This document shows, piece after piece, positions 26,001-28,293 of a DNA stretch of 64,000 nt. A program made the position numbers and the translations under genes. The stretch lies in assembly GCA_904063045.1 (NCBI GenBank), contig CAJFCJ010000007.1, forward strand, positions 3,913,404 through 3,977,403, read 5' to 3'. Below the pieces are notes generated by a model. The model made no database searches, was not told where the DNA came from, and saw only the letters and a list, made by a program, of their open reading frames with translations. The stretch comes from Dimorphilus gyrociliatus (lineage: Eukaryota; Animalia; Annelida). Numbering within the stretch: the stretch's first letter is position 1; every line of letters starts with the position of its first letter.

Positions 26001-28293
26001 TTTCTGTTCAATAAACTACTCTTTTAAAATACTTTAATCTTGGTGATCATTGGCATAGATCTAACGATTAAATTATATAAACTGCGTTGCCAACAAAGCA
26101 CTCAGCTATCATTGTTTACTTTGTATTAATTATTACAAAAACACCTGTTCGAACAGAACAGTTTTCTCACGCTCTAATATCAGACAGGTAGCAAATTAAC
26201 TAATTACAAAGTTAAAAAGTCTTACCAGTTTGAAGAGCTAATGGTGGAGGGGGTGGAGGGTGGTAAACGGGTAAAACCGTTTGTTTATTCATCTTTTCTG
26301 ATCCTGCCCCGGATAGATCGACCGGACCAGAATCTCGGTAAAATCCACCTGCTTGTAAATATTTATAATGTTTCCACAATCTTGATCTCATTTTGAACTC
26401 ACTTTGATGCGGCACGTGCAAGTATGGAGAAGAAGGGAGTAATCCCATACCAAATGCATGAGGAGACATATGGTAGGTTAAGCGACCCTGAAAAACATTT
26501 ATAAGCAATAAAAGAATCCATTACAATTAAAAATGTTTATCGAAACAACAAATCTACTGATAAACAGAAAATCAGAGAAGATACAATTTTATTACTATTT
26601 CATTCAGTGTAGGACTATTCCAGTCCAGGTACAAATGATGAAACGTATTCATAAAAGTATTGCCTGTATTGTTCACAGTTTTTTTAATAGGCAACTGCAT
26701 CTTGAAGAGACTGCTTGTAGAATGGGATGTAATACTGATAGTGTTACACAAATTTATTGATGTTGCACCTACAGGGGATATTTATCGGAAACGAGTTTAT
26801 TGACTGTTGCAATCGAAATCATCTAAAGTTGTTCGGCAAAATTTCCCTCTCTTAACCTTTTATCTCTTCCGAAGCAATAAAAAAATTTAGTTTGGACACG
26901 GGATATTTCACATCAATTCTTTCCTTTTATAGTTATTTGATGATAAATTTTCGGTATAAAAAAACATTTTTCTTCATAAAAGAACAATTAACTAAACAAA
27001 AGCAACGATAAAATAGGTACTAAAATTCGCGCACAGCTGTCTGTCTCTTTAATACGACTCAGCTTACAATAAAACAAATAGACTAGTGAAATTAAGAGTT
27101 CTTTCGTATTGACAATACAGAAATTTGATAGACGCCTTATTCCAGCTCACGGCTATGAAATATACCCATTCTGTTAATTTTCACAAACTTTTTCGATTAT
27201 TAGGAATATACCTAATCAACATATATCAAAAGGTTAGCTTGAAAAAAGATATGCACTCGTTAGTCTTTTCTCTCTCTCTCTCTCTCTCTCTCTCTCTGGT
27301 ATCTATCTTTCCTATGCCCTTGCCCCCAACCACCCTCTCTCTCTCTCTTCATCAGCATATTTTGCCCTTCATATTCCCTAATTAAGAAAGAATATTTGGC
27401 CTCTGTTTTCATACCAATATTCTTTCTCTTTTCTTCCTTATATACTTTGTACACAGTATATAGACATCTGTCTTATTCCTATCTATCCTCTCTAAAACTC
27501 CACCCTATCTTAGCAGTAATTATTTATAATTATAGGTTTCATCGCTTTTCAATTGCTTATGAAGACCATCTGGATTACGCAATTCTTCGAAAGGCGAAAA
27601 GCATATGAGAAACACCACCAACAAATAAACTCATCCTCGCAACGTATAGAAGCGCAAGAAGCGTTACGACAGAGCGTGAGAATACGGCACCTGCTAAATG
27701 GTGTGTGCCCCTGATAAAACACTCAATGATTTTCTTCTTTTTCCGTGTTCCTTTGTCACAGGAAAATATTCTTATCCTTTTTAATTCGACAGGCTAGTGA
27801 GATTGTGTTATCTACAGTAATTATTTTTACTTTTACCAAGGACTTTTATATTATGAATAAATTAATAAATTCATTATGTAGTCACCTGCATATAAATCAA
27901 ATAAAATTTCAACATAAAGTCTACCAAATACACAAAGCAATTTTAATATTTGCAGGGATTCTAACTTAAGAAATTGAACAATGTGCTACAGGCTTTTTCT
28001 ATGAAAACTCTTTCTATCGAAATATCTTATACTAGAGTATATATTGCATTAAAGTTTAAAAATCTTAGGTCACTTCTGTCACGTCGAATACTTTAACGCC
28101 ATAGTGACCTAGTTCCCACAGTCTAGTTCACACACTTTGGTTTTGGTTCCCACGCTTTGTCCTGACTGATAAACAAGCGATAGTAGCTTTGTCCAGCAGT
28201 AGCAGTCATATGGGACGAATGTAAATATAAGAAAAAGAAAAAACTTACTCCGAAAGATTTTTCTTCTTTCGACTTCTCTTTGAATTCAGGCAT
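23096..28293 (-). CDS. RBPJ: Suppressor of Hairless / RBPJ (CSL). Core exon about 24406-23096; 27-nt micro-exon 25469-25443; Pro-rich exons about 25768-25571 and 26488-26226; putative first exon 28293-28249
   Basis: [59 protein letters not shown]. The micro-exon restores the conserved KLTREAM. The first exon [15 protein letters not shown]|gtaagt is phase-compatible, but its linkage is inferred (low certainty for the 5' end). Confidence 0.95.
25286..25312. repeat. (CT)n microsatellite in a Su(H) intron; a second lies at 27269-27297
   Basis: Read directly. Confidence 0.9.
26164..28154. promoter_or_regulatory. Cluster of CSL/Su(H) binding sites (YGTGRGAA) and CACCTG E-boxes in the 5' introns of the Su(H) gene
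   Basis: CGTGAGAA (-) 26164-26171; CGTGAGAA (+) 27675-27682; TGTGGGAA (-) 28113-28120; variant TGTGTGAA (-) 28127-28134; CGTGGGAA (-) 28147-28154; GCAGGTG E-boxes at 27688-27694 and 27883-27889. Confidence 0.65.

What the first reader, a model, noticed from the sequence alone, without database searches (positions are those of the whole stretch)
26164..28154. Su(H) gene carries a dense cluster of its own binding sites: candidate autoregulatory, Notch-responsive enhancer
Seen: four perfect YGTGRGAA sites plus one TGTGTGAA variant within 2 kb of the 5' introns. Three are co-oriented within 42 bp (28113-28154), and one lies 5 bp from a GCAGGTG proneural-type E-box (27675-27694), with a second E-box at 27883. 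At about 30% GC I estimate one such site per ~14 kb, so ~0.15 are expected here; by eye I found about five in the other ~62 kb. Established: Drosophila Su(H) has an autoregulatory enhancer built from clustered Su(H) sites, and Su(H) plus proneural E-box is a known Notch-target grammar. Inference: Su(H) autoregulation may be ancestral to protostomes or convergent here. I found no inverted paired-site (SPS) geometry.
Basis: partly seen in the sequence, partly recalled or inferred. Interest (0 to 1): 0.8.

Follow-up and report, generated by a model that had tools for sequence, protein, structure and literature searches.

The report
Conserved Su(H) sites inside annelid Su(H)
The Notch-pathway transcription factor gene Su(H) of the tiny annelid Dimorphilus carries its own binding motif in three short intronic elements that have stayed conserved through an ancient gene duplication and in other worms, so it very probably regulates itself, as already shown in flies and nematodes.

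Summary
All five motifs and the adjacent E-box are at the stated coordinates. They lie in introns 1 and 2 of a transcript-supported Su(H) gene (minus strand) of Dimorphilus gyrociliatus.

On counts alone the cluster is only modestly unusual: at least 4 sites in 2 kb occurs in 0.45% of shuffles of the window.

The stronger evidence is comparative:
- D. gyrociliatus has a second Su(H) paralog whose synonymous sites are saturated against this gene.
- The first-pass non-coding alignments between the two loci are three 64-91 nt blocks (CNE-A, B, C). These are exactly the blocks holding the motifs.
- The same blocks are kept for both paralogs in a second dinophilid genome.
- Of 45,088 6-7-mer patterns, only the Su(H) core GTGRGA occurs in 11 or more of the 12 block copies.
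- Strict motif matches outside the blocks are not conserved.
- Capitella has 12 sites at its Su(H) locus against 3 expected.
- A Su(H)-site/E-box/TAATTA composite like CNE-C sits in the same intron in Capitella and in the nemertean Tubulanus.
- The same scan recovers the known Drosophila autoregulatory socket enhancer (ASE).

Verdict: these are real, constrained cis-regulatory elements, most likely Su(H)-bound auto- and cross-regulatory. Binding and Notch response are untested. This is a new spiralian member of a kind known from the Drosophila ASE and the C. elegans lag-1 first intron.

The parts
23037..28724 (-). Su(H) paralog 1 of Dimorphilus gyrociliatus (DgyrCDS6595/6596/6597). Exons: e1 28248-28724 (ATG at 28293), e2 26226-26486, e3 25571-25769, micro-exon e4 25443-25469, e5 23037-24407 (ORF ends at 23096).
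   Evidence: Spliced transcript contigs with GT..AG introns on the minus strand. The joined exons give one open frame. Pfam domains. Annotated isoforms map to these exons.
28105..28176 (-). CNE-A, in intron 1, 72-143 nt after the exon 1 donor. In gene orientation it reads TTGTTTAT, CAGTCAGGACAA, CGTGGGAA (28147-28154), TGTGTGAA (28127-28134), TGTGGGAA (28113-28120), TAGGTCA (28105-28111).
   Evidence: 83-86% identity to the paralog locus L001 7971-8032 and to L002. In the 4-way alignment CGTGGGAA and TGTGTGAA are invariant; the third site is TGTGGGAA in the Su(H)-1 copies and CATGGGAA in the Su(H)-2 copies. 93% identical to the sp2 ortholog against 65% overall.
27660..27734 (-). CNE-B, in intron 1. 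RCAGGTG E-box (27688-27694), then 5 nt, then a Su(H) site on the opposite strand (27675-27682, CGTGAGAA). Also conserved: CATTGAGTGTTTT and GGCACAC.
   Evidence: 77% identity to L001 8286-8362. In the 4-way alignment the E-box is invariant with fixed spacing. The site reads CGTGAGAA, CGTGAGAA, CGTGAGAG and CGTGGGAG in the four copies.
26086..26175 (-). CNE-C, in intron 2, 51-140 nt after the exon 2 donor (26225) and about 190 nt upstream of the alternative first exon 1b. Su(H) site CGTGAGAA (26164-26171), 15 nt, ACAGGTG (26142-26148), about 8 nt, ATAATTAAT (26125-26133), then GATAG and TTGGC.
   Evidence: 74% identity to L001 10384-10473. The composite pattern is found once per spiralian Su(H) locus on the sense strand.
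26690..26822 (-). CNE-E, a paralog-conserved block in intron 1 with no Su(H) motif.
   Evidence: 72% identity over 134 nt to L001 9440-9569, 74 bits against a null maximum of 32.6. 4-way alignment.
27005..27154 (-). CNE-D, a weaker paralog-conserved block in intron 1 with no Su(H) motif. Core sequence GCGTCTATCAAATTTCT...GTCAATA.
   Evidence: 45 bits against a null maximum of 32.6. 4-way alignment.
25853..25997 (-). Alternative first coding exon 1b, implying an internal promoter downstream of CNE-C.
   Evidence: The first exon of annotated isoform P0001 maps to 25853-25897, and that of paralog isoform P0002 to L001 10621-10701. The conserved peptide YSIDEF..RFFD is found in both paralogs and in sp2, and a similar peptide in Tubulanus. 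The transcription start itself is not shown.
27883..27889 (-). Not conserved, probably chance.
   Evidence: The region does not align with the sp2 ortholog and the motif is absent there.

Best explanation
The five motifs belong to three short conserved non-coding elements in the 5' introns of Su(H)-1. They are cis-regulatory modules that the gene's own product most likely binds, and the product of its paralog as well.

Proposed mechanism, by analogy with the C. elegans lag-1 first intron and the Drosophila ASE (inferred, not shown):
- In cells receiving Notch signal, Su(H) bound at these sites recruits the Notch intracellular domain and Mastermind.
- Together with factors at the adjacent invariant motifs, it raises Su(H) transcription. 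Those motifs are an RCAGGTG E-box in CNE-B and CNE-C, a TAATTA-type homeodomain site in CNE-C, and forkhead-like and nuclear-receptor-like motifs in CNE-A.
- Transcription would rise from the upstream promoter and, through CNE-C, from an internal promoter for exon 1b.
- Without signal, the same sites would allow Su(H)/co-repressor default repression.
- Both paralogs keep all three elements, so the two genes would be co-regulated and would cross-regulate.

Shown here: the gene model; the position of the motifs; purifying selection on them; and a shared motif grammar in Capitella and Tubulanus.

Inferred: Su(H) occupancy, Notch dependence and the sign of regulation.
For: Gene and intron positions.

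Cluster statistic: P=0.0045.

Paralog comparison:
- The paralog locus L001 gives only five blastn matches to the whole window: exon 1, the main exon, and the three motif-bearing blocks.
- Paralog synonymous sites are saturated: 4-fold-site identity is 0.22-0.35 and the Nei-Gojobori dS cannot be computed.
- Orthologs group by paralog, so this is not recent gene conversion.
- In a second species, dS is about 1.3 for Su(H)-1 (dS for the Su(H)-2 pair could not be computed) and overall alignment identity is 65%, yet the blocks are 91-94% identical.

Motif specificity:
- GTGRGA is the only one of 45,088 6-7-mer patterns present in 11 or more of 12 block copies.
- Substitutions inside the sites mostly stay within known CSL-binding variants (A/G at the R position, RTGGGAA) (PMC4133882).
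- Strict matches outside the blocks are not conserved: L001 6623, 6904, 7630 and 9729.

Context in this genome: intron 1 is 1761 nt against a genome median of 66 nt, and ATAC peaks in this genome fall in unusually long introns (PMC7854359).

Other species:
- Capitella has 12 sites against 3.0 expected, with 9 in 3.4 kb upstream of the exon-2 equivalent; 0 of 500 shuffles reach this.
- The CNE-C-like composite sits in the positionally equivalent intron of Capitella and Tubulanus. The pattern was fixed before Tubulanus was examined for it, and the shuffle P there is 0.003.
- The same scan recovers the known ASE 3' of D. teissieri Su(H).

Protein: the core is 73% identical to fly Su(H) across the DNA-binding domains.
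Against: - There are no binding, accessibility or expression-response data.
- The count statistic alone is weak, and not significant if the neighbouring sites are pooled.
- Several conserved copies depart from strict YGTGRGAA: TGTGTGAA, CATGAGAA, GGTGGGAA, CGTGAGAG. Their affinity is unknown.
- Two of the five paralog-conserved blocks have no Su(H) motif, so conservation does not by itself point to Su(H).
- CAGGTG is also a Snail/ZEB-type repressor site.
- CNE similarity to Capitella is not above the blastn null.
- Tubulanus and Saccoglossus show no significant tight cluster.
Confidence: 0.65

Rival explanations
1. The blocks are real enhancers, but the GTGRGA/TGGGAA cores are read by a different DNA-binding protein with an overlapping motif, for example a Rel/NF-kB half-site reader, an Ikaros/Hunchback-like factor or another zinc-finger factor. 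In that case there is no Su(H) autoregulation.
For: Several conserved copies are off the strict consensus, including an invariant TGTGTGAA. No binding data exist. Other invariant motifs in the same blocks show that multiple factors act there.
Against: The shared core extends to GTGRGA(A), not just TGGGAA. The invariant best site is CGTGGGAA, the canonical high-affinity CSL site. The same motif clusters at the Su(H) loci of Capitella and Drosophila, and at C. elegans lag-1, where CSL binding was shown (PMC4133882).
Confidence: 0.15
2. Su(H) binds the sites, but the loop is mainly negative or Notch-independent. It would act as default repression that buffers Su(H) dosage between the two paralogs, or as Notch-independent maintenance, rather than as a Notch-responsive positive enhancer.
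For: CSL is a repressor without the Notch intracellular domain. In lag-1 the same sites are needed to switch expression off in the anchor cell (PMC4133882). The Drosophila ASE maintains Su(H) in socket cells over the long term (PMC3390367). Retention in both paralogs fits dosage control.
Against: The conserved Su(H)-plus-E-box pairing is the known Notch-activated grammar (PMC3390367). Nothing in the sequence decides the sign.
Confidence: 0.1
3. The conserved blocks are not transcription-factor platforms. They act at the RNA or promoter-core level, as splicing enhancers near the exon 1 and exon 2 donors, as the core promoter of exon 1b, or as an unannotated RNA.
For: CNE-A lies 72-143 nt after the exon 1 donor. 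CNE-C lies 51-140 nt after the exon 2 donor and about 190 nt upstream of alternative exon 1b. A plus-strand spliced contig exists in this gene, further downstream.
Against: No Rfam match at E<=1. Spliced contigs of two organisms skip the blocks. CNE-B is about 510 nt from the nearest exon. The content is a string of recognisable transcription-factor motifs with conserved spacing, and in CNE-B the site is on the opposite strand, which an RNA signal would not tolerate.
Confidence: 0.06
4. The cluster is a chance aggregation of a low-information 8-mer in AT-rich introns and has no function.
For: The window total of 9 is not above expectation. Pooling the neighbouring sites makes the cluster non-significant. 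Other strict matches in the paralog locus are unconserved.
Against: Every motif of the finding lies in a block conserved across paralogs with saturated synonymous sites and across species.
Confidence: 0.03

Closest known systems
[quoted passage not shown] 2013, PMC4133882; Luo, Underwood & Greenwald 2020, Development 147:dev193482, seen only in reference lists, text not held)
   Same: A CSL gene carries a cluster of its own consensus sites in a 5' intron. The lag-1 fragment is 1758 bp; intron 1 here is 1761 nt. There the sites bind LAG-1 (EMSA), are occupied by the activator complex (ChIP), activate in Notch-ON cells and repress in the Notch-OFF anchor cell.
   Different: lag-1 has 13 sites; here there are 5 motif instances in three short elements. 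No sequence homology was tested or is expected. The Dimorphilus elements carry conserved E-box and homeodomain motifs and occur in two paralogs. Function here is untested.
Drosophila Su(H) Autoregulatory Socket Enhancer, ASE/ASE5 (PMC3390367)
   Same: [quoted passage not shown] My scan finds 5 sites at 0.8-1.7 kb 3' of the D. teissieri coding sequence, a density similar to that seen here.
   Different: The ASE lies downstream of the gene, whereas these elements lie in 5' introns. The ASE partners are Vvl POU-HD sites and the A motif AACGCGAAGCT, which is absent from the window at up to 1 mismatch. Here the partners are RCAGGTG and TAATTA. The CNE-C composite is absent from the fly locus.
Su(H)-plus-proneural E-box Notch-target code, e.g. 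the E(spl)m-alpha enhancer (PMC3390367)
   Same: Su(H) sites are combined with an RCAGSTG E-box (and, there, homeodomain-class sites). CNE-B and CNE-C fit the RCAGSTG definition in 7 of 8 copies.
   Different: That code drives E(spl)/Bearded genes, not Su(H) itself. The paired inverted Su(H) sites typical of many E(spl)/HES promoters are absent here.

Membership tests
CSL-gene autoregulatory element (lag-1 intron / Su(H) ASE kind) | A cluster of consensus CSL sites within or next to the CSL gene itself, above chance. | tested here: met
   4 strict sites plus 1 variant in 2 kb of introns 1-2; P=0.0045 by shuffles and 0.9% by permuted motifs. The paralog has 6 in 3.8 kb (0 of 500 shuffles reach it) and Capitella has 9 in 3.4 kb (0 of 500).
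CSL-gene autoregulatory element (lag-1 intron / Su(H) ASE kind) | The sites are under selection (conserved where neutral sequence is not). | tested here: met
.
CSL-gene autoregulatory element (lag-1 intron / Su(H) ASE kind) | Co-occurring conserved 'local activator' motifs next to the CSL sites. | tested here: met
   An invariant RCAGGTG at fixed spacing in CNE-B. ACAGGTG and ATAATTAAT in CNE-C. TTGTTTAT and TAGGTCA in CNE-A.
CSL-gene autoregulatory element (lag-1 intron / Su(H) ASE kind) | The CSL protein binds the sites (EMSA, ChIP or CUT&RUN). | not testable with these tools
   No binding data are available. The protein core is 73% identical to fly Su(H), which is only indirect support.
CSL-gene autoregulatory element (lag-1 intron / Su(H) ASE kind) | Expression of the CSL gene or a reporter depends on the sites and on Notch activity. 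| not testable with these tools
   Needs Notch inhibition and a site-mutant reporter.
Orthologue of the Drosophila ASE | Position 3' of the gene, with the A motif and Vvl sites. | tested here: not met
   The elements are in 5' introns. The A motif is absent at up to 1 mismatch. The CNE-C composite is absent from L010. It works like the ASE but is not the same element.
SPS-type (paired inverted Su(H) site) Notch response element | Two sites in inverted orientation about 15-17 bp apart. | tested here: not met
   None is found with a relaxed RTGRGAR motif at 13-19 bp spacing in the window, L001 or L009.
Deeply conserved non-coding element | Non-coding, spliced out of mRNA, and conserved beyond neutral expectation in independent lineages. 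| tested here: met
   The blocks are intronic in the spliced contigs of two organisms. No Rfam match. Conserved between saturated paralogs and two dinophilid species. For CNE-C the motif grammar is also present in Capitella and Tubulanus. The cross-phylum homology rests on a composite pattern, not on an alignment score.

The most novel reading that the evidence does not exclude
CNE-C is a single ancient cis-regulatory module: a Su(H) site, 13-15 nt, ACAGGTG, 7-8 nt, then ATAATTAAT, lying upstream of a conserved alternative first exon. On this reading it has been kept in the Su(H)/CSL gene since before annelids and nemerteans split, and was then retained in both dinophilid paralogs. CSL self-regulation through an intronic own-site element would then be ancestral at least to Spiralia. 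Together with the lag-1 intron and the fly ASE, it could be ancestral to protostomes.
Probability: 0.3. Interest if true: 0.8.

Novelty: new member of a known kind. Interest (0 to 1): 0.62.

Why it matters
CSL self-regulation has been shown experimentally only in two ecdysozoans, the fly ASE and the nematode lag-1 intron. Those two elements are not alignable with each other.

Here a spiralian shows the same logic, with unusually clean evolutionary evidence. The gene duplication acts as a natural footprinting experiment that isolates three elements of 64-91 nt, and it singles out the Su(H) core as their only common word.

A short, explicit motif grammar recurs in the same intron of a sedentary annelid and a nemertean. 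Whether Notch-pathway feedback on CSL is ancestral or convergent therefore becomes directly testable with small oligonucleotides and reporters.

It also shows that a very compact genome (median intron 66 bp) kept a 1.8-kb intron where regulatory content sits.

Tried and rejected
- **Exact-protein look-ups that failed:** P0001, P0002, P0008 (Owenia), P0020 (Pomacea) and P0003 (Tigriopus). Only the longest isoform of a gene is indexed. No mollusc, and no third annelid lineage beyond the dinophilids and Capitella, could be examined.
- **blastn of the CNEs against Capitella:** the best hit is CNE-C at the right place, but at 25 bits it is below the reversed-sequence null of 31 bits. Cross-family homology therefore rests on the composite pattern only.
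- **Other grammars outside dinophilids:** the CNE-B-type composite (E-box, 3-8 nt, reverse Su(H) core) was not found outside dinophilids, apart from one probably chance hit upstream of fly Su(H). For CNE-A only a low-scoring blastn of the block against Capitella was run (not above the null); no CNE-A pattern scan was run in any locus.
- **Tight-cluster statistic elsewhere:** not significant in Tubulanus (9 against 6.1) or Saccoglossus (11 against 6.3). Seven of the nine Tubulanus sites do lie in the 5' flank and intron 1, but I chose that interval post hoc.
- **Negative scans:** Rfam, paired-site scan, Drosophila A motif.
- **Repeat origin of the sites:** rejected.
- **Recent gene conversion between the paralogs:** rejected, because the block sequences group by orthology and carry fixed paralog-specific differences.
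- **Literature:** the text of Luo et al. 2020 is not held.
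Full report
**1. The observation**

The window has nine YGTGRGAA matches. Four lie at 26164-26171 (-), 27675-27682 (+), 28113-28120 (-) and 28147-28154 (-). The TGTGTGAA variant is at 28127-28134 (-). GCAGGTG is at 27688-27694, 5 bp from the 27675 site, and again at 27883-27889.

Dinucleotide shuffles expect 6.0 sites per window. At least four sites within 2 kb occurs in 0.45% of 2000 shuffles. 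On the real sequence, 0.9% of 3360 position-permuted versions of the motif reach it. If the two strict sites 34 bp apart are treated as one event, the statistic loses significance (P about 0.13).

No tandem or dispersed repeat underlies the sites.

**2. The gene**

The 433-aa ORF at 23096-24397 (-) has LAG1-DNAbind, BTD and TIG_SUH domains. It is 100% identical to Dimorphilus gyrociliatus DgyrCDS6595.

Spliced contigs from a 100%-identical run and from a run about 95% identical give these exons on the minus strand:
- exon 1: 28248-28724
- exon 2: 26226-26486
- exon 3: 25571-25769
- micro-exon 4: 25443-25469 (27 nt)
- exon 5: 23037-24407

Joined, they read through from ATG 28293 to the stop, and they match annotated isoform P0121.

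Intron 1 (26487-28247, 1761 nt) holds the sites at 27675 and 28113-28154. Intron 2 (25770-26225) holds the site at 26164.

An annotated alternative first exon (isoform P0001) maps to 25853-25897, about 190 nt downstream of the block that contains the 26164 site. The genome-wide median intron is 66 bp, and intronic ATAC peaks in this species sit in unusually long introns (PMC7854359).

**3. Comparative evidence within dinophilids**

D. gyrociliatus has a second Su(H) gene, DgyrCDS9524/9525. It is 80% identical in amino acids over the full length. Its locus was fetched as L001.

Logan DNA contigs from one sample set (SRR23372216, 228, 229, 231) carry both genes of a second, unidentified dinophilid-like species, which I call sp2:
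- L006 is syntenic with the window, running from MATCAP to SLC12.
- L002-L005 are syntenic with L001.

The duplication therefore predates the split of the two species. Between the paralogs, 4-fold-site identity is 0.22-0.35 and the Nei-Gojobori dS is not computable, so synonymous sites are saturated. Between the species, dS is about 1.3.

Against this background, blastn of the 22.5-kb L001 against the whole 64-kb window returns only five matches:
- exon 1
- the main exon
- w28105-28168 (83%)
- w27660-27734 (77%)
- w26086-26175 (74%)

I call them CNE-A, CNE-B and CNE-C. A more sensitive search adds two further collinear blocks without Su(H) motifs, CNE-E at 26690-26822 and CNE-D at 27005-27154. 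The reversed-sequence null tops out at 32.6 bits.

Four-way alignments show the state of each motif:

| Block | Motif | State across the four copies |
|---|---|---|
| CNE-A | CGTGGGAA | invariant |
| CNE-A | TGTGTGAA | invariant |
| CNE-A | third site | TGTGGGAA in Su(H)-1, CATGGGAA in Su(H)-2 |
| CNE-B | RCAGGTG | invariant; the 5-nt spacer has constant length |
| CNE-B | Su(H) site | CGTGAGAA, CGTGAGAA, CGTGAGAG, CGTGGGAG |
| CNE-C | Su(H) site | CGTGAGAA, CATGAGAA, TGTGAGAA, GGTGGGAA |
| CNE-C | E-box | ACAGGTG in three copies, ACAGATG in one |
| CNE-C | ATAATTAATA | invariant |

The sequences group by orthology and have fixed paralog-specific differences. Recent gene conversion therefore does not explain the similarity.

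Against the sp2 ortholog, the three blocks are 91-94% identical where the whole 5' region aligns at 65%.

As an unbiased test I enumerated 45,088 six- and seven-mer patterns with at most one R/Y position. The only one present in 11 or more of the 12 block copies is GTGRGA, the Su(H)/CSL core.

The controls behave as expected. Four other strict matches in the paralog locus (L001 6623, 6904, 7630, 9729) and the E-box at 27883 are not conserved in sp2.

**4. Beyond dinophilids**

The Capitella teleta Su(H) locus (L009) has 12 strict sites against 3.0 expected. Nine of them lie in 3.4 kb upstream of the exon-2 equivalent, and 0 of 500 shuffles reach this.

As a positive control, the same scan on Drosophila teissieri (L010) finds five sites at 0.8-1.7 kb 3' of the coding sequence. 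That is the position of the known ASE (PMC3390367).

Tubulanus (a nemertean, L011) and Saccoglossus (a hemichordate, L012) show no significant tight cluster.

A composite pattern derived from CNE-C and Capitella is TGRGAA, 8-22 nt, an E-box, 3-12 nt, then TAATTA. Across 298 kb of window plus loci it occurs only at CNE-C and its orthologous and paralogous copies in the dinophilid loci, once in Capitella (L009 6966) and once in Tubulanus (L011 17683). It is always on the gene's sense strand.

In all three lineages it lies in the intron between the exon encoding the 'P(V/L)DL(S/T)' motif and the exon encoding the 'NG...TPPSP'-type segment.

The pattern was fixed before Tubulanus was examined for it. 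Six of 2000 shuffles of that 50-kb locus contain it. For Capitella the figure is 8 of 3000, but the pattern was partly fitted to Capitella.

The stricter pattern CAGGTG-N5-10-ATAATTAAT occurs once per spiralian locus and in 0 of 100 shuffles of the window. The six-way alignment extends the identity to ATAATTAATATTAAAT between Tubulanus and Su(H)-2.

A peptide resembling the dinophilid exon-1b peptide (YSIDEF...) is encoded 130-170 nt downstream of the Tubulanus composite.

The caveat is that blastn similarity of CNE-C to Capitella does not exceed the null. Cross-phylum homology is suggestive, not proven.

**5. Interpretation**

Shown:
- The motifs are real and intronic.
- They lie in elements under strong purifying selection.
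- The CSL core is the common denominator of those elements.

Inferred: Su(H)-1 and Su(H)-2 bind them. The DNA-binding core is 73% identical to fly Su(H), and LAG-1, CBF1 and Su(H) all bind RTGGGAA (PMC4133882).

The most likely mechanism follows lag-1. There, 13 sites in a 1758-bp first-intron fragment bind LAG-1, are occupied by the activator complex, activate lag-1 in Notch-ON cells and silence it in the Notch-OFF anchor cell (PMC4133882). It also follows the fly ASE, which has five Su(H) sites plus local-activator motifs (PMC3390367).

CNE-C, sitting just upstream of exon 1b, may be a promoter-proximal element of an internal promoter. CNE-A and CNE-B look like intronic enhancers.

Because both paralogs keep all three elements, cross-regulation is expected.

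My confidence figures are 0.65 for the best explanation, and 0.15, 0.10, 0.06 and 0.03 for the four rivals listed in their own section:
- a different factor reads the core
- the loop is mainly repressive or Notch-independent
- the blocks act at the RNA or core-promoter level
- chance

**6. Comparison and novelty**

This works like the lag-1 intron cluster and the ASE. It is not an orthologue of the ASE: the position differs, and the A motif is absent. It also lacks paired-site geometry.

My literature searches found no report of Su(H) autoregulation in annelids and no Notch study of this species that touches it.

I class it as a new member of a known kind. The added value is a duplication-based footprint and a candidate cross-phylum CNE.

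Two earlier first-reader notes on this genome flag CSL-site clusters at the Notch gene and at NRARP. I did not test them. They are consistent with the motif being the working Notch code in this species.

**7. Limits**

- There are no functional data.
- Only one non-dinophilid annelid and one nemertean locus could be fetched.
- sp2 is unidentified.

Noticed in passing
window 24378-25600: One transcript contig of the 100%-identical run joins 25118 to 25460 with GT..AG on the plus strand, inside intron 4 of the minus-strand Su(H) gene. It also runs unspliced across the exon 5 boundary. This may be a spliced antisense RNA.
   Followed up: no
window 26346-26399: A 54-nt in-frame alternative intron lies inside coding exon 2. 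It is removed in one contig and in annotated isoform P0121, and retained in the related organism's contig.
   Followed up: partly
window 25443-25469: A 27-nt coding micro-exon lies between exon 3 and the main exon. It is supported by contigs of two organisms and by all three annotated isoforms.
   Followed up: partly
window 25853-25997; L001 10621-10701; L011 about 17830-17880: Alternative first exon 1b encodes a conserved peptide: (D/E)YYSIDEF.(R/Q)RFFD in both paralogs and sp2, and DEYSFIDEYSF in Tubulanus. In Su(H)-1 the annotated start ([15 protein letters not shown]) uses a different frame from the conserved one, and the conserved frame would be out of phase with exon 3 at the annotated donor.
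   Followed up: partly
L001 (CAJFCJ010000013.1:1150883-1173387): D. gyrociliatus, despite genome compaction and gene loss, keeps two Su(H) paralogs, 80% identical in amino acids. Both are also present in a second dinophilid-like genome, so the duplication is old.
   Followed up: partly
window 28724-28872: The Su(H) transcript contig reaches 28724, and a plus-strand 333-aa ORF with no Pfam match starts at 28872. The two genes are head-to-head with under 150 bp between them, which looks like a bidirectional promoter.
   Followed up: no
L011 6483-17681 (Tubulanus): Seven of nine strict Su(H) sites in the 50-kb nemertean locus lie in the 5' flank and first intron, and six of the seven are in the G form (five CGTGGGAA, one TGTGGGAA). 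I chose this interval post hoc, and the tight-cluster test was not significant.
   Followed up: partly
window 25277-25318 and 27269-27297: (CT)n/(TC)n microsatellites in Su(H) introns 4 and 1. The one at 27269-27297 lies between the conserved blocks; neither overlaps a conserved block.
   Followed up: no
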